The notes: generated by a model not told the origin, from the sequence alone. A stretch of 64,000 bases of DNA from Takakia lepidozioides (GCA_030704615.1 CM060734.1:54746001-54810000); one strand, 5' to 3'; numbered from the stretch's first letter, positions 7,136 to 57,069 are shown. Made by a program: numbers and translations.

Positions 7136-7790
7136 CCAATGCAATTCCTAGCTGCGCTGCATTGTCCAGCCTCACTTCAGGAAGATAGAAGTATGCGTGT
7201 GGTGTGCTACAGATCAAAGGGAGATCCAAGGAGGGCGATTCATGAAAAGATTGTGCAAGAAAGAGAGAGAGAAAGACATTGGTCTGTGATGGAGGTGAGC
7301 TTGAGACAGGGATGTAGCAATCCCTGCAACACAACACCGATTCTCACATTCCTATGCTGAGGGAAAGATGGCTAAATCATAGCTCGTCATCTCGTAGTGC
7401 ATGCCCCGTGCATTGCGATAGATTCTGTGGAGGCACGATTTAACGAATCTGTCACATTTCATGGTTTGAGTCACGACTCACTTCCAGGATTACTTCATGG
7501 CAGTTGCATAACATTCTTGTGCACGATGGGAGAGGAGACAGGAGCGGCCCAGCCGAACATGGCACACCTCCAGGCACGACCACCTCCCCCACACGACCAA
7601 CTATTACCCAAACCAGTTGGGACTGGCTAAACCTTGGCGATGCTAACTTGGTGTGGCTTCAACGCTTCAACAAGTTATGGCTAAATCTAAATCGAATTGC
7701 ACTGAAATTATTTCTCAGTGAATTACTGAAGGAAAAAGAATGTATATATGTATGTATGTATGGATATGTATATCCATATATATATGACTA

Positions 7791-15406: not shown

Positions 15407-18400
15407 GGACTGTCTTGGAGAGGACAGTGCCAGTTTGGCTGTCGAGTTCCAACATAGAGACCGAGGATCCTGAGAAAGGTCTGCTGGAAGATAGCCAAAC
15501 AGGGAAGTCCAGTATTGGAAGTATAGGGTTGAATGGAGCTGCCAATGGGACAATCAATGTTAATGGTAATATTAATGGTTCACTGGTGCAGGCATCTCCA
15601 GCAACTGTGCACAGCCCTGCTGGTAATTTGCGGAGAGGACATGGCAGTAGGTACTGGCCTGAGCCCTTATTCTCTGTTTGCATCAATCTAATGTATAGCT
15701 GATGGGTCTCCCTTGCTTTTCCTAGTCAACTTAAAGGCCATTTTTTCCGGCAGAACTACATGACCTCACACACACAGGATTTTACATAGATTTGGAGCAA
15801 ATCTCTGAAAATTTAGACAACCCTCATTCTTGAAAATTTGCATGTAATGGATGTTTTTTCGACTTACATCATGGGTTGGCTTGCAGGTCATTCATGGGAA
15901 GTCGAGGGAGCCTGGTTGACGACAATGAATTGGAGGAAGGAGTAGTGGACAGGTCAACAAAAGAGCGGCAGTTTAGGTCACGAAATCAATCGCTAATATC
16001 TGGCTTGTCATATTGCCTTTCTTCCTGCGGAATGATCCTTCTCAACAAACTTGTTTTATCGGGCTACAATCTCTCTGGGGGGATCTCCCTTATGTTTTAC
16101 CAGGTAGCTTTACTGATTTCCGTTTCAGCAAGACTGGCTAGTCAAGATTCTTGGCTAGGATTCATCTTCTGATTTGCATCCAGGTATTGGCACTGAATCT
16201 TTGAGAATGGGGTTTGATCCTTGAGCTGCTGATAACCCTCTGGACCGGGGGTGAGGGAGGGAGAAGCTAGGTGTGCTCAGTGTTAGCTCAGTCCGTTTGA
16301 CTGATTAAGACACCCCTCCTACTTCTGACTTCTGCAATAAGGAAGCCATAAGTTAAGGTCACTGCTAGTTTGTTGGTTTCATGGTTTTACATTACCTGGT
16401 TAAAGCTGAGATGGAGTGGACTACCATGCTTGCGGGAAAAGGGGATCTCCCAAAAATTATGCCATCACTAAATGGCAAGAATGCCCTGTGTATGTATATG
16501 CAGAATTTGATAAGCGTGCTTTTGGTCTACATTTTAAAAGCGGTTGGGGCCATCACTACTGAACCAATAACATGGAAGCTCATCAAAGTGTGGTTTCCTG
16601 TCAATATTCTCTTTGTCGGCATGCTGGTGACTAGCACTTACAGGTACTTTCGTGTACATGTCCTGTGGATTTTTTTCTTGTCCTTCTTCGTCTTCTCCCA
16701 TGACACACTTTGTGTCCGAGCCACTTCTGGGTTTCCTCATACGCTATTTTGCCCACCGGGCATCCTGTGGACTTCAGTAGCTTTTCTCTTTTTCCCTTTC
16801 TTGGTTTCCTCTCTCGTGCCTTCTATTATAAGTTCAGGGGAAGATATTAAGGTTCTTTTAGGGTCTCCTCGGCCTTGGCAGTTATGCCGGCTGGACGCGC
16901 TTAGAACTTACCTGCATGAGGCACTTTGTCTCTGAGCTGCGCTTGGGGTTTAATGTGCTGTTAGGTTCTCTTGGTGTGTTTCCTGTCCTGTTCCTCTCTC
17001 CTTGTCCACCACGTTCTCTGCATCACTTGCTTGAACAATCTCAAGAACAAGACAGGCAGATGGATAACACATTGGGGGAGGTTAGGATCTGCTGAGTTGG
17101 CACATGCAAGCAGTGGACCAGAGCAAACCTGTGTTTGAGGAGATTAGAAAAAGATATTGCTGTCTCTTCAGAGACTGGCAGAGGCATTTGTTTTTGAAGA
17201 TCTGAAAGGTTGGCAGCTTATCTTCACAAGATGCTTGGTCTTTGTGCAGTGATTTAGGCTGGTTTCCTGTTGTTGTTGTCTGGTAGGCATCTTTGACCTA
17301 GAGGCTGTTTGGACCTTTGTGGGCTTTTGGAATGTTTCTCTCACTAACCTTTGAGCCCCTGGGGACGTTTGGGTGACTGGTGCTCTGGTTACGGTGGTGA
17401 GAAGGTTTTCACCTTCTGAACCAAAGGCAGTAACTTTTCGGGATGAAATGACACCATAATTTACGCTTGCTTCTGCAGGAGTCAACCTTAAGTTTTTCTT
17501 TCTCTTCCTCTTCATTTTTCATGAAATATGGGTGCATTTTTTGACCCAATATTTTGGTGGCAAGCAGTTTGAAGCTTATGAATGTGGCCATGGTCACAAT
17601 CCTGAAGAATGTTACCAATTTGATCACCGCTGTGGGGGAGATCTACTTTTTTAACAAGCTGCACAACAATAAAGTCTGGGTCTCCCTCTTTCTGATGGTA
17701 TGTTATTTCTTGACGTTGTTGCAAACATCATTGCCAGCATTTCAGTTGTACAGATTGATGCCTGTTTCTTGTTCTGAAATGGGAAACTGTGATCCTCTGG
17801 ATTGAATTACTATGACAGGAAGGGTTAGCATGTATTTGTTAGGACATGAGCTTCCACTGAAAAACTATTTGTATCACATCTTATGCAGTATTGTAAAATT
17901 ATAACCGACTTGTGTTTGAGCCTGCAGCTGGTATCTGCTATAAGTGGAGGGATCACAGATCTCTCATTTCATGGGCTGGGCTACTTGTGGCAAGTGATCA
18001 ATTGCTTTTGCACTTCAGCCTATTCGGTCAGCTCACTTCCCCCATCCCGTAACTCTCATTTTACTGTTTTCCTGCCACTTCCATGTGTCAGGGTTCTATT
18101 CTGACTACCAGACACAGCAGTGCCTTGCCATCGAAATTGCATAGATTCAAATGGTCAAGTGGTACTTGACTGCAGGCATATGCATAAAATAAGTCACCGT
18201 GCTTAGGTCATTTCAATTTGTGATTGCGTTCCACCTTCATGCCTCAACAGAGGAGTGCAGCCAGCCCAGCCCACTCACCCTCCCGAACATTGCACATCTA
18301 GCTGTCTGTCGACAGCATCAAGCCTAAGCATGAGAGGCAGTGGCCCTACAAGACTGGAAGTTCGTTGCACTGTACTTTCATGGGGCTCTTCATCTTTTAG

Positions 18401-21400
18401 CTTAGTGTAGTATTTGTTAGTGCCCAATGATCTCGTTGGGCTCCCCAGGGACTTCATAAAATTGGTCTACCTGTTTCTCTACCCGTATGTCCTTTTTAAC
18501 TGTTTCTTTCTCACCCCTTTCTTTCATTCTTTGGTTCTCTCCTAATGACTTCATCTCTGTGTCTCCCTAGTAAGCTCCTAAGAGGGACTAAGGGAAAGGG
18601 CGTGCAGTTACGGCTGAGGAAAGTGATGGACCTAGCCAAACAGAAGACAAGTTCTGGCACTCTGAATGAGTTTTCCATGGTCCTGCTCAACAATTTGCTT
18701 TCATTGCCTTTAGGGTTTTGCTTGATGCTGGTCTTCGAGGCAAATGACATATGGACATTGTAAGTTCTCTTTGTGCCGTACGCGTTCCATCCCCAGGAAT
18801 TACCACAGGAATTGTTGGAACTACTTAGGTTCCCTGGATACCTGCTTAAATGTCAACTCCTCACAGTTGGGTTGTAAAATAAAGGGTTCTCATTTTTTTG
18901 AACTGCCATAGGAAATATCTAGGAGAGACCAAGAGTTACCACAGGGAACATGCCTTGCTAACCTAGAAAGGCCTGATTTTATAGGTAGCCCAAACATTTT
19001 TGGGAGAGGGGTTTGCTCATTGCACTGGGGAAGTCCACTTCTCCCCATCCTCCTGTACCTCCCCTGCACCCCACCAAATCTAGAATGTGTAGGATTGATT
19101 CTGCTTGGCTCATTTGAACTTTGGTGCTCCTTTTGTGAGGAAACAGGCCAGCATTGAAGCTTCCGATGTTCTGGATGGTCATCACACTGAGTGGGGTCTT
19201 GGGCCTAGCTATCAGCTTCACATCTATGTGGTTCATGCATCAGACTAGCCCTACCACTCACAGGTAAACATCTCTTCCTCCTCGCAGACTATCATTAACT
19301 GTAGACCTGCTAAGGTGGATCAGCTAGGAGTAGGAACTGGTCCAAGCTGGTTAAAAGCTGGCAATAATATCTATCAGTGGCTATCCTATCTGTTCGTACT
19401 GCCTGAGTTTCAGCTTGTGGTAACGTCCTTGGGGGAGAAACAGAGGGGAGTATAGGGAAGGGAAAAAGGGCTTGGGTAGGGGGGGAAATGTTGGGGTATG
19501 GTGAATTTTACCATGCACATTTTGTGGGTGTCTTAATTAGCAAGGGAGAAGTGGAAAGTGCATAGCAGATGAGAGTCAACTTAATTTTGATCAGGATTTG
19601 TTATTGAAAGTGGGGGTGGGGGTTTTGCAGTTTGGTGGGATCATTGAACAAGATTCCTCTGTCATTGGCGGGCATTTTACTCTTTAAAGTACCGACAAGC
19701 CTCCCAAACATGTTAAGTATATTATTTGGTAAGTCATCCGTTCTGTCTCTCTGTACTCCGTGGAGAGATGGCCTATGGTTCCGCCTCTGGTCTTGTGGGA
19801 TCAAGGGAAAGATGTGGAGAGTTGTCCACAACTTGTATGCTCACACCAAAAGCTGTGTCACTGTTAACGGACAAAAGTCCAACTTCTTTGACATAGACCA
19901 AGGTGTAGCTCAAGGATGTACTCTCTCCCCTCTGCTCTTCAATGTTTTCATCAATCAACTCCTCGAGGATGTGGAAAGTGAGGGATTTGGGTTAAAGGTG
20001 GGTGATACCACCATACCAGCCCTTATGTTTGCGGATGACTTCGCAGGCATAGGGGAGACTCCAACCAATCTCCAGGAGTTGATTGATTGCGCGAAGAGAT
20101 ACTTTGATCTTTGGGGGCTAGAGGCTAATGTCAGCAAATGTGCAGTGGTAGCATTCAACGACAGAGGAGAGAGAGGAAGTGATCTTAAGTGGCAGTGGGG
20201 TAGCCAAGAGATCCCGGTCCTCCCTTCCTACACTTACCTGGGCGTTGAGTTTTCCGGAAAGTTGTTCAAACTGGCAAGGGCAAAGCTCTGGGGCTCACTA
20301 AATTTTTCCACTGCAGAGGGGTCAACTCTGAGGTTAAGAAAACCATGCTTTGTCGCGTTATTAGACCTGCCTTGGAGTACGGATCTGCAATATGGGTTGA
20401 TAACTCCGACCAAGCTAAGTCTCTAGAATCCATTCAAGTGGGGGTGCTTAAGGAGTGTATGTCGGCATGCTCCAAAACAGCCAATGTGGCTGTTCGGGGT
20501 GAGTTTGGCATTCCGTCCTTAAGCTCCCGACGAGATGAATTCAAGGTCAGATGGTGCGGTCAGCTGCAACATATGTCCAACACCAGATATCCTAAGTTAA
20601 TCGACTCTATATCTTGGAAACAGGACCGCCCTGTCAAACAGGCTAAGTCCTGGCAGAAGAGAGTAGAAGAGATTCTCAAGGACCTGGACCTGGAACCGCA
20701 AGTCTTGACCCTGCTGGATAAATCTGACTTAGAGGCTGTAGTGTCCAAATCCATGTCTGTTGCCGTGAGATTGTCTGATGAAAATGAAGTTAGGCAGAAA
20801 ACTTCCCTGAACTTGTTTCCAGTCAGTGACATGGGGGAGGACATCTTGGATGACCTCAAGGGTCTACCCACTCTCGGCACTAGACTGAAATTTAAACTCA
20901 GGGCAGGAAGCCTACCTTTGAACAGCAAACAGAAGCAGAGAGGAAAGGGAGAGTGCAATTGCCCGTTGTGTGGGCAATCTGAAGACAGTACTCATTTTCT
21001 GATACACTGTCCGGGGTTCTCTCACCAAAGAGACGCTCTCTTCAAATCTATCAAGGGAATTGTGCCTGTACCTCTGTTTACCAACTTTGAAAGTCTCGAG
21101 GCTGAGCCAAAAACCCAGGCCCTCCTGAGGCCTAGTTATTGGGCAAATCACACACAGCAGATTGATGCTTGTGTGAAGGGATTTCTAGAGGATATCTGGA
21201 AAACCCGGATTAATTCTATATATGGAGGTAAGTCTTACTACCAACGTCAGCCCCTGTCAGAGGTAGGTTCTGTCCCTTCTGTTTCCGCTCAAACTGGGCG
21301 CGGGGTCAATGGCCACAAGGCTACGGCAAACAACGTCTTATGAGTACAATCTCTGTACTCCGTTTTCTTGGCTTCCTGTTTGTTGCTGCACTTTTTCATG

Positions 21401-24887: not shown

Positions 24888-24966
24888 TTCTCACTTTGCA
24901 TTAGACTGAAATTTTAACTCAGGGTGGGAATCTTGAGGCTGAGCCTAAAGCCCTGGCCCTGTTGGA
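24888..24966 (+). mobile_element. Small internally deleted fragment of the same RTE-X-like LINE
   Basis: TAGACTGAAATTTTAACTCAGGG...GAGGCTGAGCC matches ~20880-20903 joined to ~21097-21130. Confidence 0.6.
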
Positions 24967-26485
24967 GTATAATTGCTGACACCTCTAGAATGTAAGCAAA
25001 TTATAGTAAGGTCTGATGAGCTATCACATTGTCGCTGTAGATAAGATTAATTTCTTGCAACATGTTGTAATGGGCTTGTATGTATGCGCAGTATGTATGT
25101 ATGTATGGGCAGTGAGTTGGAATGGGACTTCTTCTGGTCAGATGTGGGATGGATGTAAGAGTGTTTTTAACCAAACTCACCAGGTCTGTGCTTGCCTCCC
25201 ATCTTACTACTAACTATTGTTCATTTTCAGTCACTGTTGGAAGATCTTTGGCTTTGGTAAGCAGTTGTTGAGTTTGAAAAGTTGAGGGTTTTGGCCAAGA
25301 GTTCACAGCATGGGCTAGCAGGCTTTAGAGAGGACCAGCACAGCATCAACAAGTGGGGAATTTCCATTGACCCTCATTTCGAGGTGGACTGATGGAGATG
25401 AAGACAGAGGGAGCCTTGTCTCTGATCATAGCCACATACTATCGCCCCTTTTCAGTCCCCCTTGGAAGATCTTTGGTTTAAGTGAAGGCTTGCTTAATTG
25501 TCATTTGAGGTGGACTAATGGAGATGAAGACGGAGGAAGCTATACAGCACAGACAAACTCAAACCCTTGATGAGAATGTGACAGAAATCCAGACAAGTTT
25601 GTACACTGATCTGGAGAGTGTGATTGTCTGCGAGCAGGAGCTAAATGTAGCTCAAAGGTCATATGTGACATGGTAATGGAGTGGTCAAAATGACTCATTT
25701 CCATGGTTATCATACTTAATGGTCGCCCTCCAGTCCAGCGAATTTTCATTTGATACAACACCAATACTCATAGTTAAGAATTTGAAGCATAAAGGGACAA
25801 GATCCGAGTTTATTGGTGCATAGGGGGTTATAGCCATATCTCTCTAGCCAGTTTCATCAAAAGGTGGGTAAAGAGTGGGAGGGGGATGAGAGACGAGCAG
25901 GACGTGGCCAAATACAATTGCTCCAGTCTTTACCAGTAGTGGAACTTACCTCTTGCCACCTGGACCAAAGGTGAATGATGGGCACCCCATGCTCCCAGTG
26001 AACCACCACTGCAATTGACAACCTGCACACTGTTCAACCCGTTTTCAACTTCGGTGTATCTATTGAAGGTTATTCTCATCAGTCCATAGACTTGATAGTC
26101 CTTGGCAAACTTTGTAAAATGAGGGTTGAAGTTATGCAAATCGAACTATTGGTCAAAGATTACATATGAGAAATGCCTTGCCTGCCTACAGCCGTCTTTC
26201 ACGCGTCATAAATCTTTTCTATTGTCTCTTGTGGAACAAATAAACAAGACACACTGACTCTGACAGTCCTTCCCATGATATTTTGACATTCATGAACAAG
26301 TCACTATGTAACCTGAAGAGAGAAGTGACAAGTGACCCAGAAAATTTGAGTGATTGAAGTTCAATAGCTATGCAAGAGGAAGAAATAGACAGATGAAGAA
26401 AAGCATGTGATGCTTGGACAGCACACTCAGTTCGATGGAACACTTGTAACCCCTATATGTTAGTACGTAAGAGGGACACCAGCCT

Positions 26486-26630
26486 TGGCACCTCTGTTCA
26501 CCAACTTTCAAATCTTGAGGCTGAGCCTAAAGCCCCAGTCCTGTTGGTGCCTAGTTGTTGGGCAGCTCATACACAGCAGATTGATGCTTGTGTGGCCGGC
26601 TTTCTAGAAGAAAACTGGAAAGCCCAAACT
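26486..26630 (+). mobile_element. Fragment of the same RTE-X-like LINE
   Basis: CCTCTGTTCACCAACTTT...ACACAGCAGATTGATGCTTGTGTG...TTTCTAGA matches ~21070-21210. Confidence 0.75.
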
Positions 26631-27099
26631 ATCCCATTGTAACTAGGATGCGCATTTACAAAAAGTGCTTCAAACAGCTAATTGCAAAGCTTTTGGTCTC
26701 ACAAAATTATCCCACTATAGATGGATTAATACTGGACCATGCTTAGCAACATTGTTTTTTTTAAGAGAACAGGGGATGGGCAAAGGTCAGAGTGACATCT
26801 GGTAGAAGTTTAGCCCTTCAGGGCACAGGAGACCTGTTTGTGGATTTGAGGAAGTAGAATTTTCTATGTTCTTTTTGCAGCTTTGACGGTGTCACCATGG
26901 ACCACTATTCCAGCCTTGACGATGTCAACATGGACCTCTTTGCCCTACCTTTTCGGGCCCATTGTCATGCACAAACAAACGTGATGTGGTCAGGCTGAAC
27001 ACCCCTTCCCGCATCACTTGTTCATAGGTCTCCGAAGCCTCCATCCCGCGCCCGGGCTGTGCATATCTTGCGATCTCTTCACATCCCGTGCCTTCATAG

Positions 27100-29543: not shown

Positions 29544-30141
29544 AGAGCTGTTAGCAGCTACTCTGACGCCATACTATAGCTATATCCGTAGTACACACTT
29601 CAATGCTTTGTACCGTTAACTCTGGCGCTCGGCGGCTTAGCCTGTGTCCATTAGCGCCTCGACAAGTGGTGCTGACTTGGAAATGATGTGGCAGTTGAAT
29701 AAAAGGGCTCTGGAAAATGGAAGCCGGGCGGTATTTTCATGTGTTCATTTCTGTGTACAAGGGTGTGCTGCAGAGATGGCGGAGAGCATGACTGACTGAT
29801 GAACGAATCCTGTGTACTTGTTCTGTGCGTTCGGAGCTTCAGGAGGACCTCTGTCATAGTCCTCTGCTGATAGATCCCATCCTCTCCGCGATATATGCTT
29901 TGCCGAGCTATCATCCCTGATACTTGCGTTATGGTAGAGGAAAGGAAAATCTAACCCCCCATGAGTTTTGTAGCATCACAAAGCACTACAATATATTGGT
30001 GAAATTTATATTGCGAAATTGAGGGACTCATAACATAACAACCGGGACTACATATATGACTCTAGAGCTATGAAACGTATTTTAGTGATTATTTTATCAC
30101 TCTATTGGTCTGGGGCCAATGCCTTCAAATCCGGGAGCGCC

Positions 30142-30457
30142 TAGGGAATTCCAAAAAGGCCTTGATGTGAAATGCAGCGCAATTCACTTGATCAGATGCC
30201 AATTCAATTGAACTAACCCTAATTTGCAATTCAATTGAATTGTAATCTATAATTTTTAACGCAGTTTTGTATATAATATATATAATATATTATCATGTAT
30301 GTGTATATGTATATATATCGTATACACATATACATACGAGAGTATAAGCTGAATATACATGCTGGCCCGTCTATTCCTGCTGCCCGTCCATCCTTTGCTT
30401 GTGGTAAGGCCTAAGTCACGACATGAGTCGCGTAGCCTAAAGGAGAGATATATACTA
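30142..30457 (+). repeat. Left TIR (316 bp)
   Basis: Near-identical reverse complement of 34827-35189 apart from indels. Confidence 0.95.
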
Positions 30458-30473
30458 CACATATATATTAGTA

Positions 30474-30720
30474 GAGGTATCGTCATTAGGTTGTAGCCCT
30501 GTTTGATATATCTACAGAGGTATAGTATTTCATTTTACAAGAAAAGTTGGCCAAATTAATCTATATTTATGCGGAGGTATCGTCATGAGACAGTAGCCCT
30601 GTTTAGTATACCACCAGAGGTATAGCGCCTGACTTACAAAGAAACCTGGTCAAATCAGCCTATATGCAGGTTGAGGTATCGTTATGAGGTAGTTGCCCTG
30701 TTTAGTATACCTACAGAGGG
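30474..30720 (+). repeat. ~100-bp tandem repeat x2.5 just inside the left TIR
   Basis: GAGGTATCGT...GCCCTGTTT...AGAGG recurs at 30474, 30574 and 30673. Confidence 0.75.
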
Positions 30721-31159
30721 ATTGGCAACGTACGCATTCTTATCTCTGTTTTTATCCCAGTCCTCGCTTGTTAGATTTTACAGCTGTTCATCGCGTAGTA
30801 CTTGGCTACATTATTGTCTATTGTTTCTGGTTTACTCAATAAGAAGAGTGGGATAGAAATGTCAAGTGAGTTTTTCATGGTACGTGTTATGGTTGGGTGG
30901 ATAGGAAGAGGCCAAGGAAGAGGCAGCAGCAGAGCTGACACATTTGGTAAGGCAACCGTGTCCATCCTGAGTATGAAGGATGTTGCACCCTCGGAAATAC
31001 AAGATGCTTCAAGTAAGTTCAAAGAGCTTTCTTCTCTTTCTGGTGTGCTGGATATGTATGCGGAGGACAACTAATATCACCTTAGGTACCAAGGGAGAAA
31101 CAAACAACCAAACCCTATTTCATTTCATTTCTCTCTCTCTCTCTTTCTCTCGTGTTTCT

Positions 31160-32468
31160 CCCTGTCCTCTAGGAAGCCTATTGACATTGGGTGGACTTGA
31201 AACAGGAGTACATTAATGTCTCTATCACTAAATGCCGGCCTTCTGACCTCGTGTCCTTGTTTGTTTCAACCTTAAGCGTTTTGCTTCAGGTAAGGTAGTG
31301 CATTGGATTTAGTTGGAAAGCTTGGGGCCTTTCCCTCTTTAGAATATGCCTACACGGGCCATTCCCTGCAACTCCCTGGAGTGTGATCTCTGAATGGTAA
31401 CAAGCGGACTCCTACCGCTTGGGGGCAGCCCCTCCGCCCAAATTGGGCAGTCGTATGCTCTGTCTAGCATACTCGGCACTTGGGCTCGGGTTGGTTCCTG
31501 TGCTTAAACTTATGGCCTGCGAAAACAATCAAAAATTTAGCTCCTATCAACATCAACACTCCTCAGGGTGATCCCTGGGAATTGGTTACTTATGCCAAAT
31601 CTAGGGCTTCATGTGTAGTTTTTGGGGTGAATCCCAGGATGGACGATGTGTCCTTTAAAACTACATGCTCTACCTTAGGCTTGGATTTCATGGTTAATGG
31701 TACCATCTCGAGACTTGATAACAGGGGTACGTTGAAGGTTGCAATGACCAAAAGTGCTTCTAATAGAGTCCCGCATCAATTCAATCTCAAATAAGTTCGT
31801 CCGTGATTTCTTGTTTGACAATTGTGAAATTATCAACAAGGGTTTGAGGTACGAGCATAGTATCTGGCTAAAACTGAATTTGAAGGGCGGCATGAGAACT
31901 CTGCTAGACCTCTTTGTCCGTTGTGTTTACATGCCCACAGAGGGGACCCTGTGTGCTGACGCAGACAAGGCCTCACAAGTTTTGAAGCTGGACTGTGCTT
32001 CGTTCCTTGCCAAAGGTCACGTGGTACTATTGGGGGACTTCAATGCCTGGGTGGGCAAAGGGATCCATCAGGACGATATCATTGGACCTTTTGGTGAGGA
32101 CGAGCTGAAATCTAATGGCAGACGGTTAATTAACTGTCTAGAAGAGCTTCAGCTTTTGACCTTGAATAACAGGACAAGAGGTGTCCAAGTGCAGTGGACT
32201 CGTGAGAAACCCCAAACTGGGGAACGTTCCATTGTGGACTATATCATAATGGACAAAATTTTGTTCCCCCAGTGTGCCGATGTGTTGATCGACAGAACTG
32301 ATATTGGTACCTCTGACCACTTGCTGGTTTGGACTGACATCAAAAGGTATTTTCCCACCACCAAGAGATCTGTGAAACGTTCGATTCGGAAGTGGCGCAT
32401 AGAAAAATTCCACAATAAGGAGGTCAAGGCTGAGTACGTCCAGGCCTTGCAAGAGGTTCTCCCTCAAC
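31160..32468 (+). mobile_element. 5' part of a LINE (ORF1 remnant plus APE endonuclease), 3'-truncated, inside the transposon
   Basis: ORF 31754+: CVYMP, VVLLGDFNAWVG, NGRRL, SIVDYII, TSDHLLV are APE endonuclease motifs. No RT domain follows. Left boundary is approximate. Confidence 0.8.
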
Positions 32469-32485
32469 TAGATCACCAGTCACAC

Positions 32486-32632
32486 CTTCATAGGAGTGGG
32501 CATGTGGCTTGCAAGTGTTGGGCTGCCAATAACAAACCCACTACAACGTTGCACTACAACCATAATCTCATCACTATTGCAGAACTCAGCATTCATGCTC
32601 TCGATTCCCACTCCAGCCTTTCAAATTCCTCA
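32486..32632 (-). pseudogene. Flavodiiron protein (FLV) exon fragment, flavodoxin-like domain
   Basis: Manual translation (not in the ORF track): *GI*KAGVGIESMNAEFCNSDEIMVVVQRCSGFVIGSPTLASHMPTPMK, followed by a GT donor. Resembles FLV GITKAGVAVE...GFIIGSPTLGGH.PT. Confidence 0.75.
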
Positions 32633-33377
32633 ACTTCCATTCAGCATCCCATGAACCCCACATGCAGCCCGAGTGTTATTACAAACACGTTATGTGCTTT
32701 GGTAAATACTGTTGTGGGAATGAGGCAAAGCCCTCAAACCTTGGCCAAATGTTTATGCAAACCTCCTTAAACTGCTTGTGAGCTAAATGGGTTTGATGTG
32801 CATGCCAGGGCTAGCTCCATCTCATTTTTTGGGGGACCCTTTGGGAGACAGATGACTTACTTAGAAGTGCTTCAGCTTCCTCTGATTCACTGGCAAAAGA
32901 AATATGGCTAGCTCTGAAAGAAACAAACAATTTCAAACCTCACAATTGATGAATGGCTTCCCCTGCATTATCATGTACTCCCCTGGCACTAGTATCTGGC
33001 CCCCATGACACAACCCCAGAGAAAACAAAGACATGTTCATTTCGAGAATTATCTCCAATAATCTTGTTTCGATACCCTTACAAAGGTATCATGTTGCAAT
33101 TGGGCTGTGTGTTCGATAGAGAGTTTAATATATCAACTCTTAGACGTTGATACTCTTACAGTGGTATCATGTTTGGTATATGTACATAGCCATATATTGG
33201 CATTATAAGGGCTTGGCAGTATGAAATTGGTTAGTGTCTCAAGGTGCAGATGAAACATGCTAACTTATTTAGATTGTAAGCAACACCCACCAGTCAAACT
33301 CATCCTCAGAAGAGATTGATACACAAAAATTTCTCAGGGTCGTTGGTGCGCAGGCTTTTGTCAAGGGCTTGATATCA

Positions 33378-34165
33378 TCATAAAGGTGTTTCAGAACGTG
33401 TGGCTTCAATGTGTTGTTTTATAAGAGAGTGCTCTACTGCAAAATCAGATCGAATTCGTAAAGGTGCTCCAAACTTGGAAACTGCATCGTGATATCCTTT
33501 TAAAATGGTTTTTTCTTTCTTGTTTCTTGCAACGTTCGCCCATAAAACAAAATGAGAGGCCCCATCAATGCCAGCATGTACTCGAAGACCAAACATAATC
33601 AATTTGTCATAAGTTGCACCACGAATTGCATACATGTTTTAGTTTGCCTACAATTTTGTGCGATATGTAATACAAGAAAACGTCTTGCATGTGCATCTTC
33701 AAAGAACATTAAGATGCATGAGATAAAATACTTACAGTCAATGTGCCATAGAGCCATAGGCATTGTCACATTATACTGAGTCCTCTGAATTGCCTGTGCC
33801 CTTCTCCTACGCTCATAATGGTAGGGTGAGATGATTTTCAAAGCTTCCCCCACCTTCCTTCGAGGAATCCGCCAATTTGACCTCCTTAAGGCAGATTGCA
33901 CTGTTCTCATTCCCCAATTTGACCCATTCTCTTCAATAGGAAGTAACTCTTGAATCTTTTCACACAAGCGTTGGACACTCAATTCATGATGAACTTTGAA
34001 AGGAGACCCTTGGACTTCTGATAGCAATCTTCTCAATGGTCGTACATCATCAAAAGAAAGGGCAGTGGCGATTGATTTCATTGTGGCACCCTCATTCAAC
34101 ATTGCTTCCACATAAAGTACTAAATCATCCACTACTTTGTCACCATCCAAATGGTTGTTTTCCAT
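33378..34165 (-). pseudogene. IS3EU-like DDE (integrase-core) transposase, 2 exons, truncated before the catalytic Glu
   Basis: Exon 34165-33736: HTH-like N-terminus, WGMRTVQSALRR...RRKVGEALKIISP...RRR...YNVTMPMALWHID. Intron 33735-33614 (GTAAGT...AA). Exon 33613-33378: YDKLIMFGLRVHAGIDGASHFVLW...NK...FGAPLRIRSD. The NQRIERLW-type segment is missing. Confidence 0.82.
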
Positions 34166-34826
34166 GCTCACATTATCTGTCTTATCTCTGCATAATAGCC
34201 CCAGTGCCAATGCCTTCGACCTTGCCCTTGTTGTAATTGTTTGCTGTTAATTCTGTAGTCACTGCATCCACTCACACACTCCCCATAGGACTTACGTCAC
34301 TAAAGTTCACATAGGCTATCAAGTAGATGAACCAAATGTACTTTGAAACAACAACTACTCTATGCTAAAATGTATTAGCAAACCACAGTACACAGTGTGG
34401 GCAGGTTGAAGACAAACCATGTGATCAAGCTCTTTCTTTCAGTGTGTGTGTTGAGGAGCGTTTGGTAACCCACTCTACTACCCCTAAAGTTCTCTCCTCA
34501 AAACTCATGAGTCACCTGCACGTACACAAAAACTACAGCTTTAGCTAAAATGATACCTTTATCAATGATTGGGGGAACTCATGCCAATATGGGAATGTGC
34601 TTACTCATGGGCAGATCTTGTCATTTGGTGATCCAAGAAGGCTTCCATCATACATAGCGCCACCACCGCTCCACCACCGCTCAACCCTAAACTTGTTGTT
34701 GCATTCTTCTCTCGTTACTTCTCGTCCTCCAACTGATTTGATCCTTTCACTTTTAAGGCACCTCTGCCCTAAAAACCCTTCATCACTTCATTTCTCTCTC
34801 CCTTTCCCTCGCTCTCGCTCTCTCTC

Positions 34827-35189
34827 TAGTATATATCTCTCCTTTAGACTACGCGACTCATGTCGTGACTTAGGCCTTACCACAAGCAAAGGATGGACGG
34901 GTAGCAGGAATAGACGGGCCAGCATGTATATTCAGCTTATACTCTCGTATGTATATGTGTATATGATACATATACGTATACGTATATATGATAATATATT
35001 ATATATATTATATACAAAACTGCGTTAAAAATTATAGATTACAATTCAATTGAATTGTAGTCAGCAATTCAATTGAATCGCCAGTTGGCAATTCGATTGA
35101 ATTGCAAATTAGGGTTAGTTCAATTGAATTGGCATCTGATCAAGTGAATTGCGCTGCATTTCACATCAAGGCCTTTTTGGAATTCCCTA
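34827..35189 (-). repeat. Right TIR (363 bp)
   Basis: Reverse complement of the left TIR with extra AATTCAATTGAATT-type palindromic units. Confidence 0.95.
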
Positions 35190-35479
35190 AGCGCCCTCCA
35201 CTCAGGGCATTACACTATACATATGGTGCCATAGGATCCTTTTGAGCAATCAGCAGATATAAACATTGTACTCTGGACCGAAGCAAGAAAGCACCAGGGT
35301 AGACAAGGCTGATATTGGTATATCTTCCACATAGGTCAATGCTAGAACATGCAACAGCCCTGGCAAGAGGCCTATAAAGATTCTCCACACTGTTGGGACC
35401 GCATCGTTGAGAGGGAGGGAAAGCTGATGATGACGCAAGGATGGAGTGTGGGTCCAGAATCATCTGAGAGGGCCAGATT

Positions 35480-36420
35480 TCAAGCACAAAAGGGGCAAAG
35501 AGGTCCATGGTGACATCATCACTGTGGGAATCGTACTAGATGTCATTCTGAACAATACCCTGGTGGACATGTATGCCAAATGCGGCAGCATCGAGGATGC
35601 AAAGGGAGTGTTCCACAATATGGCCGGACGAAACATGGTGTTTTGGAATGCGATGATCGCAGGATATGCCCAGCATGTGTGTGGAATGGAGGCCTTGGGG
35701 ATGTGTGAACAAATGATGCTGGCCGGATAGGGTCACGTTCGTTTGCGTTTGCAATGCATGTGCGAGCCTGGCAGCCCTGGAAAGGGGCAAACAGTAGGTC
35801 CATGGTGACATCATCAAAGCGGGAATCGTACCAGATATCATTCTGAACACTACCCTGGTGGACAGGTATGCCAAACGCGGCAGCATCGAGAAAGCAAAGG
35901 GAGTTTTCGACAGTATGGCCGAACGAAACATGGTGTTTTGGAATGCAATGATCGCAGGATATGTCCAGAATGGTCATCACAGGGAGGCCCTGCAACTATT
36001 TGAAGGAATTCAAAAGGGAGGTTTGAAATCACCTTCATATCTACTCTCTCTGCATGTAGCCATGCCCGACTACTGGATGAAGGAAAACGCTACTTTGATT
36101 CTTTGAGTGAGAATCTTGGTGTCACTCTGACAGTGCAACACTTTGGTTGCATGGTGGATCTTTTGGGACGGGCTGGGCAATTGGATGAGGCAGAGGACCT
36201 CATCAATAAAGTGCCAATCAAACCAGATGTGGGTTTGGATGGCCTCACTTGGTGCATGCAGAATCCATGGCAATGTGGAGATGGCTGAATGTGCAACCAC
36301 ATCTATTCTCAAGTGGGATGAACAGGATTCTACAACTTGTGTTGCTATCAAACATCTATTCTGCAGCTGGCAGGTGGGATGAAATGCAAAGGTGAGAGAA
36401 ATGATGAAGCAGTATGATTG
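35480..36420 (+). pseudogene. Degenerate PLS-class PPR(-E) gene
   Basis: TLVDMYAKCGSIEDAKGVF..WNAMIAGY occurs twice; HFGCMVDLLGRAGQLDEAEDLI, LGACRIHGNVEMAE; multiple frameshifts and stops; no DYW domain. Confidence 0.9.
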
Positions 36421-39800: not shown

Positions 39801-41950
39801 TCAGCGTCTGATCACCGCAGTTCCTCTCCAACCAGCAGGTTGATCTCTGTCACAGTACCTTCTGACAGCTTTAAGTGATCGTGCACCTCCTGCTCCTGGT
39901 AGACTTTCTTCGAGGAAGTCAATTGGAATTCTCATCACAGCCTGCTGAACAATAGGCTCTTCATGTTTAGCTTTCTTCGTGGCTTGGAAAGCTTTGTGAT
40001 GTGAACTGAAGTTTTCTGGTGTCGTGCATAACACAAATAGAGGAAGGCTTGAGCTCAAGACATTAGGAACACATGTTTTACAAACACATTTCCTTGCCGC
40101 TTTAGTAAATCGCCCTCCATCCTCCAATGCTTTTAAGACCTTTGATAGCCCCTCTTTGTTGATGGAATGACTCTTCCCGGAAGCCATCTTGAAGAACAGG
40201 TACGGGCTGCTCAATGAATCAATTGACATTTGATTTGATGCCCTAGGTATGCAGTATGCTGTTAGGTCATCCTTGGCTTTTGAACAAGCATCTTCGTTGC
40301 TCTTAAACACCTGAAGCTCTGCCTGGGGAAGAGTCACCCTAAATTCTGCACCCCTATCCATAAATGTACACGTAAAAGTGCCCCCAATGGAGAGGATCAT
40401 ATGTGATAACGTCTCGAACCAATAGTCACGTAGGGCAACTATCTCAACGTCCACTGTTGTGCTCAATATGAGAGATACTACCTCAAGAATATCCTCAAGG
40501 TGCAACTTGAGGGCAAACTGATTAGCAACCCACTTTGACGCAAAGCAGAGCATTTTGCTTCTAAAGCGCCTTAGAGATTTTTTCTGAGGACTCAGTGCAT
40601 GTGCTTCGGATTGCACAGTAGTCTCATCCACGCGCCAATGGAAAAGTGAGTCACTGTCGCATGGGGAAAGTGTCCAATTGCAGATGTACAATCATAGTTT
40701 TTATTCCTTCTGCCTTCTCAGCAACAATCATGTTCCGTACTTTCAGCATCCAAGATGCTAGCCTTATTCCTGAGCTGGAATCTTTCAACACAGATCTTGC
40801 CACACCTCCAGCTACAGAAAACCACTCTTCCACTGTATCATTGGTGACGTTTCTGTCAAAATCATGAATACCCCTTCTGCAGCTCTCCATCTCATCCAAG
40901 CTAAACAAAGGAGTGTGCAGATAAAGGTAATTGGAAGATTTTCTTCTAACCCACATTGCTTTTGTTGGGCTCGCAAACACTTGCGCTTCTAATATGGAAG
41001 ATGGGCTGTTTGGTGGCCCATCATCAATAATATAAAGAACTTTAGCGCCATTGCTGGGTAGGTGGTCTAAGATTTCAAATGAGTCCAACTTCCGAACACC
41101 AGTTGACACCTCTAACTTAAAAAAGCTGAGACCTTCTCTCTGTTTTCAACCGTCGTACCCGCTATCAACTCTTGAGCTATCACAAAGGCGCATAGGTGAG
41201 ATTTTCCAATCCCCGGTGTACCCGTAAACACAACTGTGTTCAACTTTTTGTTCAACTCAAAATATTGTTTTTTAGCCTCTAAGAGCTCAAAATAACATTG
41301 TCTCAAGTATAATTGATTGGAAAATGTGTTACCCTGTCCGAGCCAGACGACTCCATCTGGCAGGTAATCACTGAGCCAGGTTGGGCCTCCTTAACTCTCT
41401 CTTGCATACCTGTGTCTCGTAAGCAAACCACAAATCTTGACATCGGATGGTCTTCATGGAGCCGTGTTCCACTCTCGGGTCCTGTAAGAACTGGACATGG
41501 TACCTTATGGAATAAGCCCTAACAAGCTGAAGCTTTGAAAACAAACTGAATTGATCAACTCCAATAAGGTTACATGAGACGTTCGGTGATTGAATACATC
41601 ATTGTCAAAACAGATACAGGAAAGAGATTGTACAAATCTAAACCATGTAAAGAAGGTGAGAGAGAATAACACACATGTTGGCAGAGGATCATAGCGCGGG
41701 GTCATCCTGAAATGGTATCCGTCAGCTTCAAGTGGCGATTCTCCAACCACGTTCAAATTTTGCCAGGCAAAGTGGCTTTTCTCCAATTAAAACCACGTGC
41801 AAATTTTGGGCAGGTTGTAAACAGCCGGTAATTCCCCAAACGTTTTCGGAGGCTTCAAGAACTTCGCATGCAAAGGCCGGAACTACGAATTGGATTGAAG
41901 GAGGTGTTCCTGGGGGCAGTCCACGCCCCTGAAAATGCACACGAATCATG
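39801..41950 (-). pseudogene. Crinkler/RHS-type (CR) P-loop NTPase + REase gene, frameshifted
   Basis: LRQCY...VVFTGTPGIGKS (Walker A), LYIIDD (Walker B), FASP, PLFSLDEM, WFSVAGGVARSVL, FASKWV, YWFETLSH, YCIPRASNQMSIDS..LFFKM (CR-REase-like). Frameshifts near 41110 and 40690. Confidence 0.78.
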
Positions 41951-48100: not shown

Positions 48101-51100
48101 CGCAACTTTATCCGATTGTCAACCAAGGTCATATGGCATGTGATAATATCTTTCTGTTTCTGGACGAGGACGTTGAGTACTGTCTATCAAAATCTATGAG
48201 ATAACCAATGTTGGATGACCAATTGTCTAGGATTTTATTGTGGAGTACTAGCTTCAGCTAAAAATTTACTCTGTATGGGCAGGCTAGCGCAACGCATTGT
48301 GCAAGGAGATGTTCCCCAAGCTCTCATGAACCGCAAGGTTTCAGAATTCGTCCTTCACAGAACATTTTGTCAATCATCTCATCTGATGATACTATCTCTT
48401 TTGCTTGTCAGACATAGCTGCGTTGGCTTGCTTGCTGTTGTCTTCTTTACTACAGATATCCTCACCACAGATTCTAGGATATTATTTTGTCTTTGAGAGG
48501 GCGAGAATGTATCCATATGACATTGTTTGCCATAGCCTTGTGGCAATTGACCCCACGCCCAGTTTGAGCGGAAGACGAAGGAACGGAAACTACCTTTGTC
48601 AGGGGCTGACGCTGGTAGTATGACTTACCTTGCAATAGACAATTGATCCGAGTTTTCCAGATATCCTCTAGAAATCCCTTCACACAAACATCAATCTGCT
48701 GTGATTGATTTGCCCAACAACTAGAACCCAAAAGGGCCTGGGCTTTGGCTCAGCCTCGAGATGTTCAAAGTTGGTAAACAGAGGTACTGGTACAATTCCC
48801 TTGATGGAATTGAAGAGGGTGAGTACCCAGGACAATGAATCAGAAAGTGGATATTGTCTTCAGGTCACCCACACAATGGGCCATTTGCAATCCCCCTTTC
48901 CTCTCTCATCAGTCTAGTGCCAAGAGGGGGTAAACCCTTGAGGTCCATGTCACGGACTGGAAACAAGTACAGGGGAGTTTTCTGCCTAGCTTCGTTTTCA
49001 TCAAGCAATTTCCTGGCAACAGACATGGCTTTGGACAATACAGCCTCTAAGTCAGATTTATCCAGCAGGGTCAAGACTTGCGGACTTAGATTCAGATCCT
49101 TTGAAAATTTCTTCTACCCTCTTCCGCCAGGATTTCGCCTGTTTGACAGGGCACTCCTGCTTCCAAGATATGGAGTCGATTAACTTAGGGTATCGGATAT
49201 TAGTCATATGTTGCAGCTGACCCCACCATCTGACCTTGAATTCATCTCGTCGGGAGCTTTACGGAGGAATGGCAAACTCACTCCAAACAGCCACATTAGC
49301 TGTTTTGGAGCATGCTTACATGCACCCCTTGAGCACCCCCACTTCGATGGATTCTGGACACTTGGCCTGGTTGAAGTTATCAACCCACACTGCAGATGCG
49401 TACTCCAAGGTAGGCTAATAATGCGGCAAAGCATAGTTTTTTTTACATCAGAGTTGATCCCTCTGCAGTGGAAAAATTTAGTGAGACCCAACGCTTTGCG
49501 CTTGCCTATGCGCCTCCCAATTACAGTTGGAGGAATACTCAATGCTAAGGTATTTGTAGGAAGAGAGGACAGGAATCTCTTGGCTCCCCGCTTCCACTTG
49601 AGTTCGCCTCCTCCCTCCCCACGGCGTGAGAGGGAGAGAGAGAGATTCTGGAAGATCTGCAAATGGCACTTACACAGGATATGTATTATTTGCAGTTGAT
49701 CTCATTGGACATGGGAGCCTTAATAGCTGGGGCCAAGTTTCGGGGAGAGTTTGAGGATCGCTTGAAGGCAGTGCTCAAGGAAGTGACTGATTCGGATGGT
49801 CAAATAGTTTTGTTTATTGATGAGATCCACACTGTCGTTGGTGCTGGTATGCAGTTCTATCTCTTCCTCTCTCACAGCTGTACAATCTTGTCCGTGCATC
49901 TTGGCTTATACTCCCAAGTGACTGTCAGTATGTGTTTGATAATTATCTGAAGTGGTGTCAGGAAATTGTTGACTTTCCCCTCTAGACAAGGTTGAATTTT
50001 CTTGGTCTTGATGCTCATTCTTGTGATGGTGGCAGGTGCTACAAATGGGGCCATGGATGCTGGAAACCTACTGAAACCCATGTTAGGGCGTGGAGAACTT
50101 CGGTGCATTGGGGCAACTACACTCGATGAATATCGCAAGTACATAGAGAAGGATCCTGCCTTAGAACGGCGCTTCCAACAGGTGTATGTAGACCAACCAA
50201 CAGTTGAGGATACTGTATCCATTCTTAGGGGGCTTCGCGAGCGGTATGAACTGCATCATGGGGTTCGTATCTCAGATAGCGCGTTGGTGGAGGCTGCCTT
50301 GCTATCTGACCGGTACATCAGCGATCGGTTTCTTCCTGACAAGGGTATGGTCTCTCTATCTCACAAACACAGACAATCACACGTTGGGTTCATTGAAGAT
50401 CTTCTGACAATACATCTGGGGTTCTGCAGCCATTGACTTAGTAGATGAAGCTGCCGCAAAGTTGAAGATGGAGATTACCTCAAAACCAACCGCACTTGAT
50501 GAGATCGATCGATCAGTGCTCAAGCTAGAGATGGAGAGGCTATCGTTGGGGAATGACACAGACAAGGCATCTCGTGACCGCCTGGGTCGGCTTGTAACAG
50601 AGTTGGAGTGGTTGAAGACACGCCAGAAAGAGCTAACTGATCAATGGGAACATGAGAAGTCTGTTATGACTCGCATTCAATCTATCAAAGAGGAGGTACT
50701 AGCAAGTTGGAAATAATTGTGCTCCTGTTTCTGCACAAAATGTAAGAGGAGAAATGACGAAATCTTATGCACTTTTTGAATTGTGTGCAGGTGGATCGAG
50801 TGAATCTGGAGATTCAACAAGCAGAGCGTGACTACGACTTGAGCCGTGCCGCTGAGCTTAAGTATGGGAGTCTCATGACCCTGCAGCGGCAATTGGAAGC
50901 TGCTGAGCAGGCTTTGGATGAATACCAGAGCACTGGCAAGTCTATGCTCAGGGAAGAAGTTACCGGAAACGATATAGCAGAAATTGTGAGCAAATGGACT
51001 GGTATTCCCATCTCAAAACTGCAGCAATCGGAGAAAGACAAACTCTTACATTTGGATGATGAACTTCACAAGCGTGTTGTCGGCCAAGACCCAGCAGTGA

Positions 51101-52454
51101 AATCCATTGCCGAAGCAATTCAACGGTCAAGGGCAGGGCTCTCTGATCCAAATCGTCCGATTGCTAGCTTCATGTTTATGGGTCCAACAGGTGTTGGCAA
51201 GACAGAACTAGCTAAGGCCCTTGCTTCATTCCTTTTCAACACAGAGGAGGCCTTGGTAAGAATAGATATGAGTGAATATATGGAGAAACATGCCGTTTCT
51301 CGTCTTATTGGGGCCCCCCCTGGGTATGTAGGATATGAAGAGGGTGGTCAATTGACAGAAGCAATCCGTAGAAGGCCCTATGCTGTTATCCTCTTTGACG
51401 AGATTGAAAAAGCTCATTCGGATGTTTTTAATATCTTCCTCCAGATACTGGACGATGGACGGGTAACAGATTCAAAAGGCCGGAAAGTGAGTTTCACCAA
51501 CACAATAATTATTATGACCTCAAATGTGGGGTCTCAATACATACTGGGTAGTGCTGAATCCACCTCCGGTAGTAGCAAGGATGTGATATACGAGGCTATG
51601 AGAGCGCGGGTCATGGAGGCAGCACGAATGACTTTCCGACCAGAATTCATCAATCGAGTTGATGAATACATTGTATTCCAGCCTCTTGACCGAGATCAAA
51701 TCAGCAGGATAGTCAAGCTACAGGTATACTTCTACCCCCTCAACAAGTTTGTCTGTAAAGCTGGGTGTGAGATTTTCTCACTACGAATAAGCCTCTGGTA
51801 TCAGTTCTTCGTATGCGATTCTCATAATATCATGATTTGCTTTAGTTCCCGACATTTCAATGAGATTTTCCACTGTAACAGCATTTAGGCATGAGAAATG
51901 ACATCCAAGTATTGAGCACAAAGTGGGTTATACTACCTGGGTTACTCCACACGGGTTGCACTTCATGGGGAGACACAAAAAGGGTTAGAGTGCATGGGGT
52001 TACACAAAGACAAAAATCAGTGCGTTAAATGAGCCATTCAGTTTTTATGCAATGAAGCCTGTTTATTGTTGTGTGCTGGTGTAGCTGATTATGAATATGT
52101 TGGTGGGCCTACTATGTTCAGTTGGATCGTGTACAGAAGAGACTGAAGGATCGGAAGATCTCTCTCAAAGTCACTGAAAGTGCAGTTCAACTATTAGGGA
52201 GCATGGGTTATGATCCAAACTATGGAGCACGACCTGTAAAGCGAGTCATTCAACAAAGCGTAGAAAATGAGCTCGCACGTGGGATATTGAAAGGAGATTA
52301 CCAGGAAGAAGATACAGTTGTTGTGGACACTGATCTCACTGCTACTGCTGGCGGTAGTCTTCCACAGCAAAAGTTGATCTTTAAGAAACTACAAATGCTG
52401 GATTCTTCTGCCCAGCAGCCTGATGCTGATCCATATGCATATGCACAGAATTGA
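45171..52454 (+). CDS. CLPB3: Organellar (probably chloroplast) ClpB/Hsp100 disaggregase; 10 exons
   Basis: Exons approx. 45171-45494 (transit-peptide-like), 46419-46637, 46973-47210, 47640-47835 (GEPGVGKT), 48283-48337, 49696-49846, 50036-50344, 50430-50695, 50791-51723 ([19 protein letters not shown]), 52122-52454 ([10 protein letters not shown]). GT-AG junctions are in frame. Confidence 0.95.
48507..49626 (-). mobile_element. 5'-truncated, decayed RTE-X-like LINE in ClpB intron 5 (antisense)
   Basis: Colinear with 20160-21349 ([41 protein letters not shown]); 13-bp TSD TGAGAGGG(C/A)GAGA at 48494-48506 / 49627-49639. Confidence 0.9.
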
Positions 52455-53929: not shown

Positions 53930-54593
53930 GTCAGCGGATTTGTGATAATTTTGTTAAATTGAAGTGCTCTGATGTAAGAGAAGTTTGACTGCGTGGATCT
54001 GTAACATTTCAACTATTGGTACGTTCACAGACTGTCTTGCAAACCCTAACTCTATGGGGGTGCTTTGGGAAGAGAGAGAGTAGCCCTTATGGGGTTGGTC
54101 AATGACGAGATGCAAATGCACAGAGAGTGAGGTGAGAGGATATATATTGGCACACCAGCATACACTACCAGGGTGAAAAGGATTTGCAAGTTTCCAAAAA
54201 CCCAAAGAAGCCCACAGAAGCCCAAAGAGAGTAAGGAGACAGAAAGAGAAGAGAGAAGAAATTTCTGACAGGGAGGCGCAGAGTGGAATGAATCTGCAAA
54301 GAACAAATCAATCCAAGAAGTGCACGGAGACCGAGAACTAAGCATTTCAGGTCCTTGTAACTGAAGGCCTCTCTGCCAATGAGCACTTTGAGAAATGCTC
54401 CTGAAGAGGAAAGAAACCAGAAGAAAGAGGAAGGGAAATAATCACATCCCGGGGAGGGCAAGATGGCGCAAGGGAGGGACACAAGAAGAGAAAAAATGCA
54501 ACTTTAAGTATGTCCACATGATGCCACAAGGGTCGATTAGACAAGTAGAACAACAAGGCACCATTTCAAACACCAAACGTTGTTCCAAACCAA

Positions 54594-56395: not shown

Positions 56396-57069
56396 AGAGG
56401 GTTACACTAAACGAGAGGGGTGACAGTGAAAGGAGTAATACTAACAGAAATACGGGGGGCACTATAGAGCCAAGGTCTCTCGTGTAACTCGGAGAGTGTA
56501 ACCCCTCGTCATCATCCTGGTTACTCTAACTTACCCAGTATTGTTACTTTTGATTCATCTGGGCTGGGATATTCTTTTGGAAGGAAATGTAGCTGGTGAA
56601 ACCAATCTTGTAATACTTGTGTCTGCATTGCTTCCGTTCTCTCCCGCTTTTTGCATTGTATACACCCCTCTCCCCAAGTTGTCACATAGGCCTCTAGACC
56701 TTTGGATGTAAAAAAATGTATTCTTCTTTCTCGCTTTGGCCTTTCCATGGTTGTGAGTTCAGCGCACCTGGTGTACCAGTTTCGTGGTGGGAAAAAAATC
56801 TGGAATTGCTGCAGTCATCTTTTCTCCAAGCAATGCTTGGTGCCAGAGGCACAACTCCATCTCACATCCTATGTGCAGAGTTTGCATGCGTGCCACTTCA
56901 AACCAAGGCCTCTTCCGGCTTACAATCTTTCTTAAAAGGTTACAATCAAGGGGCTCATGCCACGTCACCTGGATAATCTGCCGTAGAGCACTCGAGGCTC
57001 CCGCCGCTCACTGGCTCTTCGGCAGATTATCCCAGGTAACGTGGCTCCCAATGGACGTTCTCTAATACA

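What the first reader, a model, noticed from the sequence alone, without database searches (positions are those of the whole stretch)
30142..35189. Fully bounded IS3EU-like DNA transposon in a land-plant genome
Seen: 316/363-bp TIRs, ends TAG...CTA, a perfect 6-bp TSD AGCGCC on both sides, and an internal transposase with WHID...HAGIDG...P.RIRSD motifs. Knowledge: that motif set belongs to the eukaryotic IS3-related (IS3EU) integrase-core family. As I recall, IS3EU has 6-bp TSDs and TA-starting termini and is described mainly from animals and fungi; it is not among the standard plant superfamilies (hAT, CACTA, Mutator, PIF, mariner, Helitron). Inference: an overlooked plant branch of this superfamily, ancient or horizontally acquired. 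The perfect TSD and near-identical TIRs imply recent mobility and an autonomous partner elsewhere in the genome.
Basis: partly seen in the sequence, partly recalled or inferred. Interest (0 to 1): 0.9.

Follow-up and report, generated by a model that had tools for sequence, protein, structure and literature searches.

The report
Broken GingerRoot transposon in a moss
This is a real but dead 5-kb copy of a GingerRoot (IS3EU) jumping gene, a kind already described in mosses and clubmosses in 2019, so it is not an overlooked plant branch.

Summary
In detail: a 5,048-bp element (30142-35189) with TA...TA ends, 316/363-bp TIRs (308/316 identical plus a 47-nt indel), the 6-bp TSD AGCGCC on both sides, and a spliced integrase-core (PF24764) transposase. 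The family assignment is right, but the novelty claim fails. GingerRoot (PMC6839031) is this element type in lycophytes and mosses, with a 6-bp TSD and TA...TA ends, and it forms one lineage with IS3EU (PMC10045372, 99% bootstrap). Exon 2 falls in a land-plant-like clade (100/99) with a protein about 77% identical, by eye, to Selaginella Sl-GR-005. The host is probably the moss Takakia (inferred). This copy is non-autonomous: the part holding the catalytic Glu is missing, the exon-2 splice acceptor reads AA, and a LINE endonuclease fragment sits inside. The scan has already noted many larger GingerRoot copies in this genome, several with a HECT ligase gene. I found HECT genes beside relatives in moss-like contigs, a green alga and a fish, but no confirmed remnant in this copy. 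One mild extra: the alga Coccomyxa shares the same intron. Low interest.

The parts
30136..30141 (.). Left target-site duplication, 6 bp (AGCGCC)
30142..30457 (+). Left terminal inverted repeat, 316 bp, begins TA
30474..30719 (+). Subterminal tandem array, 2.5 copies of a 99-bp unit (76% matches)
30720..31753 (.). Unassigned interior. A CT-rich leader near 31100 and an ORF at 31480-31794 may be the 5' part of the LINE fragment (by eye only)
   Evidence: no Pfam hit, no Rfam hit, no hit in related loci
31754..32470 (+). Nested non-LTR retrotransposon fragment: apurinic endonuclease domain (Pfam match about 31916-32329), no reverse transcriptase after it; right edge approximate
   Evidence: PF14529 E 2.2e-7, above cut-off
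32471..33384 (.). Unassigned interior. A by-eye resemblance to a HECT C-lobe at about 32700-32950 (+) was tested and not confirmed
33385..33613 (-). Transposase exon 2 (YDKL, HAGIDG, RIRSD with the second catalytic Asp), cut off before the HNQ-RIE motif that holds the catalytic Glu; lower edge approximate
   Evidence: PF24764 E 7.5e-12
33614..33735 (-). 122-nt phase-1 intron just after the first catalytic Asp; GT donor intact, acceptor reads AA instead of AG
   Evidence: same intron site in related loci and in Coccomyxa
33736..34165 (-). Transposase exon 1, 143 codons from the likely ATG, helix-turn-helix-like N-terminal region ending in PMALWHID (first catalytic Asp)
   Evidence: 45-48% identical to L001, L002, L004; 33% to Coccomyxa P0024; HTH-type clusters in the Atlas
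34827..35189 (-). Right terminal inverted repeat, 363 bp including a 47-nt extra block, ends TA
35190..35195 (.). Right target-site duplication, 6 bp (AGCGCC)

Best explanation
A non-autonomous, internally deleted copy of an IS3EU/GingerRoot DNA transposon in a moss genome, probably Takakia lepidozioides. Shown: intact TIRs, a 6-bp TSD, a transposase gene with its first two catalytic Asp residues but no catalytic Glu, a dead splice acceptor, and a nested LINE endonuclease fragment. Inferred from DDE-transposase biology: an intact family member makes a transposase whose N-terminal helix-turn-helix region binds the TIRs, and whose integrase-like core cuts at the TA ends and joins them to target DNA with a 6-nt stagger, which repair turns into the 6-bp TSD. 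This copy inserted that way about 300 bp upstream of a decayed PPR gene. It either decayed afterwards or moved already deleted, using transposase in trans. With its ends intact it could still be moved in trans. Simple cut-and-paste is the likeliest route (about 0.7); an IS3-style circle intermediate is not excluded, and I found no paper testing it for this superfamily.
For: Ends and TSD match GingerRoot (72/77 TA...TA, mostly 6-bp and GC-rich TSDs, 3.9-12.9 kb) and IS3EU. Exon 2 is 30/67 (45%) identical, counted by eye without gaps, to the Sl-GR-005 DDE query printed in PMC6839031. The exon junction reproduces the PM.LWH.DSYDKL stretch of SL_GR-020. P0020 is 66/86 (77%) identical by eye to Sl-GR-005 and groups with exon 2 at 100/99. 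The catalytic-Glu region of three relatives has no match inside the element (best E 0.12). Host: best named PPR hits are Sphagnum at only 58-62%; about 5,083 windows and same-piece distances over 54 Mb fit Takakia, 325 Mb with N50 83 Mb.
Against: The TIRs (316/363 bp) are longer than the 100-150 bp reported for Selaginella GingerRoots. Repbase and GingerRoot reference sequences could not be put in the tree, so the link rests on a proxy and by-eye counts. The tree uses 95 columns and rows chosen by motif, and an AU test does not reject placing exon 2 with the animal/fungal group (p 0.23). No second copy of the TIR is in this window and no empty site was seen.
Confidence: 0.92

Rival explanations
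1. A separate plant branch of IS3EU, distinct from GingerRoot and recently acquired from animals or fungi.
For: Long TIRs; only 45% identity to the Selaginella query over the core; the AU test cannot reject grouping with animal/fungal rows.
Against: Top hits are land-plant-like, 45-64% identical. The exon sits in a 100/99 clade with the Selaginella-like P0020. The intron site is shared with moss-like loci and with Coccomyxa but absent at that site in the fish element. GingerRoot DDE matches were already found in 18 Bryopsida species.
Confidence: 0.05
2. This copy is itself autonomous or still makes an active transposase, by a non-canonical GT-AA intron or a distant third exon.
For: Exon 1 (143 codons) and exon 2 (75 codons) have no in-frame stops. 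An AA acceptor recurs in 10 of 21 distinct related copies.
Against: No sequence for the catalytic Glu anywhere between the TIRs. Two stops follow exon 2. No in-frame alternative AG without stops. Eight of the 10 AA copies elsewhere carry stops in exon 2, which points to decay.
Confidence: 0.02
3. A host-gene-carrying ('Pack') GingerRoot, with the unassigned interior made of captured gene fragments, as in 22 of 77 Selaginella elements.
For: About 1.9 kb of interior is unassigned; in Selaginella, capture often goes with loss of the DDE region.
Against: No Pfam, Rfam, in-window or related-locus match for these stretches. They may simply be the element's own spacer or a decayed second gene. This reading is compatible with the best explanation, not an alternative family.
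Confidence: 0.15

Closest known systems
GingerRoot (Cerbin et al. 2019, PMC6839031; Selaginella lepidophylla, other lycophytes, mosses, aquatic animals)
   Same: 6-bp GC-rich TSD, TA...TA ends, size within 3.9-12.9 kb, integrase-like DDE core without an HHCC motif, about 45% core identity to Sl-GR-005 by eye, seed-free plant host.
   Different: TIRs 316/363 bp against 100-150 bp. The probable host, Takakia, lies outside Bryopsida, the only moss class in the paper's table. This copy is broken and carries a LINE fragment.
IS3EU (Repbase superfamily; joined with GingerRoot in PMC10045372)
   Same: TA..TA termini, 6-bp TSD, WH.D..DKL, H..IDG and P.R.RSD motifs, first catalytic Asp 100-300 residues from the start (here residue 143).
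   Different: Animal/fungal members mostly read RSDxGxEN where the plant clade reads RSDxAxEH. The rust-fungal TET+ IS3EU ends TAYGG..CCRTA differ from TAGGG..CCCTA. This copy has no confirmed second gene.
Bacterial IS3/IS481, IS481EU, Ginger1/2 and LTR integrases
   Same: Related integrase-type DDE core (weak PF00665 hit, E 0.024; weak integrase structure hit, E 1.1).
   Different: Those end TG...CA (IS3, IS481, Ginger, most LTR elements) or make 4/15/25-bp TSDs (IS481EU). No LTRs, RT, gag or HHCC here.

Membership tests
IS3EU/GingerRoot | 6-bp target-site duplication | tested here: met
   AGCGCC on both sides, exactly 6 bp
IS3EU/GingerRoot | TA...TA termini on terminal inverted repeats | tested here: met
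   TAGGG...CCCTA, outer 85 bp identical
IS3EU/GingerRoot | Integrase-related DDE transposase of the PF24764 type | tested here: met
   PF24764 45.8 bits against cut-off 26; motifs match SL_GR-005/020 and IS3EU rows in PMC10045372
IS3EU/GingerRoot | Groups with GingerRoot transposases in a tree | tested here: inconclusive
   100/99 clade with proxy P0020 (77% to Sl-GR-005 by eye), but 95 columns, no reference sequences in the tree, AU p 0.23 for the alternative
IS3EU/GingerRoot | No HHCC motif upstream of the core; first Asp 100-300 residues from the N-terminus | tested here: met
   Exon 1 has 143 codons and no Cys pair; HTH-type look-alikes; no zinc-finger Pfam hit
GingerRoot as described in S. 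lepidophylla | TIRs of 100-150 bp (descriptive for that species; not used to define the lineage in PMC10045372) | tested here: not met
   316/363 bp
Autonomous IS3EU/GingerRoot element | Complete D-D-E triad in a spliceable gene | tested here: not met
   Glu region absent; acceptor AA
IS3EU/GingerRoot | Dispersed multi-copy family, paired TIRs with different 6-bp TSDs | not testable with these tools
   No genome-wide search here; no second copy in the window; unchecked scan notes list copies of 5-19 kb elsewhere
LTR retrotransposon integrase / Ginger1 / Ginger2 | TG...CA termini; LTRs, or HHCC/GPY motifs | tested here: not met
   TA...TA inverted repeats, no long direct repeats bounding the element

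The most novel reading that the evidence does not exclude
Plant GingerRoots are one old green-lineage branch of IS3EU, shared with trebouxiophyte algae: Coccomyxa has the same phase-1 intron just after the first catalytic Asp and lies next to the land-plant clade in the tree. A HECT ubiquitin-ligase-like second gene may be an ancestral part of the superfamily, since it neighbours the transposase in moss-like contigs, the alga and a fish. Neither point is in the papers I could read. This 5-kb copy would be a still-mobilisable derivative that has lost that gene. The HECT point rests on other loci, not on this copy, and the scan has already reported it from better copies.
Probability: 0.4. Interest if true: 0.4.

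Novelty: new member of a known kind. Interest (0 to 1): 0.15.

Why it matters
On its own it adds one more host (probably Takakia, sister to the other mosses) and a long-TIR family to a superfamily known in seed-free plants since 2019. It also shows that plant annotations missing 'IS3EU' should look under 'GingerRoot'. If the green-algal link holds, plant GingerRoots would be older than land plants and lost in seed plants, which bears on the question PMC6839031 left open about their origin. Intact copies elsewhere in this genome are the better material for that and for the HECT question.

Tried and rejected
Later queries stopped at 34824 or used the outer 79 bp of the left TIR; one local script compared the two arms and printed only positions; two pattern scans ran over the whole window with patterns from other places. 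(2) The spliced transposase was searched exon by exon by reference; the joined step was left out. (3) Published GingerRoot and IS3EU sequences have no reference here and were not typed in; comparisons with them are by-eye counts. (4) A suspected HECT C-lobe remnant at about 32700-32950 failed Pfam, the Atlas, pairwise BLASTP and a small custom HMM (best -0.7 bits, shuffled null up to 3.3): rejected as unproven. (5) TIR+TSD scans of related loci found no convincing bounded element; most are short or decayed. (6) No Rfam hit inside. (7) No paper found on a HECT gene in these elements (the one hit was irrelevant), or on IS3EU or Ginger in mosses beyond the two key papers.

Full report
Observation. 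The left flank ends in AGCGCC (30136-30141), the element runs from TAGGG at 30142 to CCCTA at 35189, and AGCGCC follows. The duplication is exactly 6 bp, with a chance of about 2.6e-4. The left TIR is 316 bp and the right 363 bp. The outer 85 bp are identical, the inner 231 bp differ at 8 sites, all transitions, and the right arm has a 47-nt extra block. No other copy of the TIR or transposase lies in the window.

Anatomy. The transposase is on the minus strand. Exon 1 runs from a likely ATG at 34165 to 33736 and ends in PMALWHID, the first catalytic Asp. It is 45-48% identical to relatives in L001, L002 and L004 and looks like helix-turn-helix clusters in the Atlas. A 122-nt phase-1 intron follows. 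Exon 2 (33613 to about 33385) hits PF24764 at E 7.5e-12. The copy is dead for two reasons. First, relatives continue with HNQ-RIE..W, which holds the catalytic Glu, and nothing between the TIRs matches that part (best E 0.12). Second, the acceptor reads AA where intact relatives read AG, with no usable alternative. A non-LTR endonuclease fragment without its reverse transcriptase sits at about 31754-32470 (PF14529). A 99-bp tandem array lies inside the left TIR. About 1.9 kb of interior is unassigned. The element lies about 300 bp upstream of a decayed PPR gene.

What it is. The literature search turned up the decisive fact. GingerRoot (PMC6839031) was described in 2019 from Selaginella lepidophylla with a 6-bp, GC-rich TSD, TA...TA ends in 72 of 77 copies, sizes of 3.9-12.9 kb and an integrase-like transposase; its DDE was also found in 18 Bryopsida and 3 lycophyte species. 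PMC10045372 showed that IS3EU and GingerRoot are one lineage (bootstrap 99%). By eye, exon 2 is 30/67 identical without gaps to the Sl-GR-005 query printed in that paper, and the exon junction matches the SL_GR-020 row. P0020, a hit of my search, is 66/86 identical by eye to Sl-GR-005, so it serves as a proxy. In a 36-row tree, exon 2 and P0020 fall in one land-plant-like clade (100/99). That clade sits among algal-like rows that include Coccomyxa P0024, apart from the animal/fungal-like rows (100/99; names). The limits are real: 95 columns, rows picked by motif, most hosts unnamed, and an AU test that does not reject the alternative placement (p 0.23). A 149-row quick tree gave the same split at lower support. 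A metagenome scan gave 42 more loci at 40-65% identity; from memory these JGI sets are peat-moss samples, which I did not verify.

Host. The tools code the organism. A PPR-DYW gene in the window has Sphagnum as best named hit at only 58-62%. The scan index lists about 5,083 windows and same-piece distances above 54 Mb. That fits Takakia lepidozioides (325 Mb, N50 83 Mb), whereas the other mosses visible in that table excerpt have N50 of 30 Mb or less. This is an inference. Takakia lies outside Bryopsida, so it would be a small range extension within mosses.

How it works. Shown: intact ends, a TSD and a crippled gene. Inferred from DDE transposases in general: an intact transposase binds the TIRs through its N-terminal region, cuts at the TA ends and inserts with a 6-nt stagger. 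Cut-and-paste is the likeliest route (about 0.7); a circle intermediate as in bacterial IS3 is not excluded. This copy needs transposase in trans. Unchecked scan notes list copies of 11-19 kb in the same genome, one called intact. Age is open: the two exons have no stops and the TSD is perfect, but TIR identity is no clock and the copy has several lesions. Four runs of one sample hold 61-63% of the stretch's words and a plant metagenome from another study holds 46%. The spliced model was searched exon by exon and the joined step left out.

Beyond the finding. A HECT-domain gene lies within about 6 kb of the transposase in moss-like contigs L001/L004, in Coccomyxa and in the fish Oryzias, though not in the Ptychodera locus. 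I saw this before reading that earlier follow-ups report it from larger copies in this genome. A by-eye HECT remnant in this copy failed every test. The Coccomyxa gene has its intron at the same base after WHID, while the fish gene has none there. That favours an old green-lineage history over recent transfer from animals or fungi, although PMC6839031 found no copies in charophytes.

Verdict. A real, cleanly bounded, non-autonomous IS3EU/GingerRoot element in a moss. It is a new member of a known kind, already met many times by this scan in better-preserved form. Interest 0.15.

Noticed in passing
L001:16020-16777, L004:7868-8476, L048:3901-7561, L049:15480-23585, L014 near 4180: HECT-domain genes neighbour IS3EU/GingerRoot transposases in moss-like contigs, the green alga Coccomyxa and the fish Oryzias, in different orientations. 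In L050 a close HECT homolog lies beside DUF7869 genes instead.
   Followed up: partly
L048:10662-10823 and window 33614-33735: The phase-1 intron right after the first catalytic Asp is at the same base in Coccomyxa and in land-plant-like copies, and absent there in the fish element.
   Followed up: partly
window 33614-33615; L006, L008, L009, L012, L014-L018, L021, L022, L024, L029-L031: The exon-2 splice acceptor reads AA instead of AG in this copy and in 10 of 21 distinct related copies, mostly ones that also carry stops. Possibly methylation-driven G-to-A decay of a CAG site, or shared descent.
   Followed up: partly
window 30505-30529, 30706-30722, 33071-33095, 33149-33173: A short, partly palindromic motif (GATAC-N10-GTATC-like) occurs in the left subterminal 99-bp repeats and twice near the broken 3' end of the transposase. 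The pattern was drawn from these sites, so its chance figures are inflated.
   Followed up: partly
window 19632-21353, 24929-24978, 26510-26625, 48503-49506, 56225-56266: Several fragments of one non-LTR retrotransposon family; reverse transcriptase at 19632-20426 (PF00078).
   Followed up: no
window 49746-52033 and 54593-56415: Tandem duplication of a ClpB/HSP100-like gene region about 4.4-4.9 kb apart, 81-98% identical; the second copy looks truncated.
   Followed up: no
window 35488-36406 (+), 63130-63975 (-), 26856-26945: Decayed PPR gene about 300 bp right of the element, related to a PPR-DYW gene at the window's end.
   Followed up: partly
window 39801-41109 (-): Two ORFs (296 and 152 aa) with no Pfam hit; by eye they recall Crinkler/RHS-type P-loop proteins. 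Left as found, not tested further.
   Followed up: no
window 6299-7144 (-) and 16381-16935 (+): Xyloglucan fucosyltransferase exon (PF03254) and, by eye, a nucleotide-sugar transporter exon.
   Followed up: no
window 57069-57606: Degenerate repeats of 58-111 nt spaced about 130 and 280 bp apart; unexplained.
   Followed up: no
L001:8142-18923 and L004:1-10900: Two contigs of one ENA sample share more than 10 kb at about 95% identity around transposase and HECT gene and diverge at one point, i.e. a multi-copy element of that size; its other end was not within the fetched DNA.
   Followed up: partly
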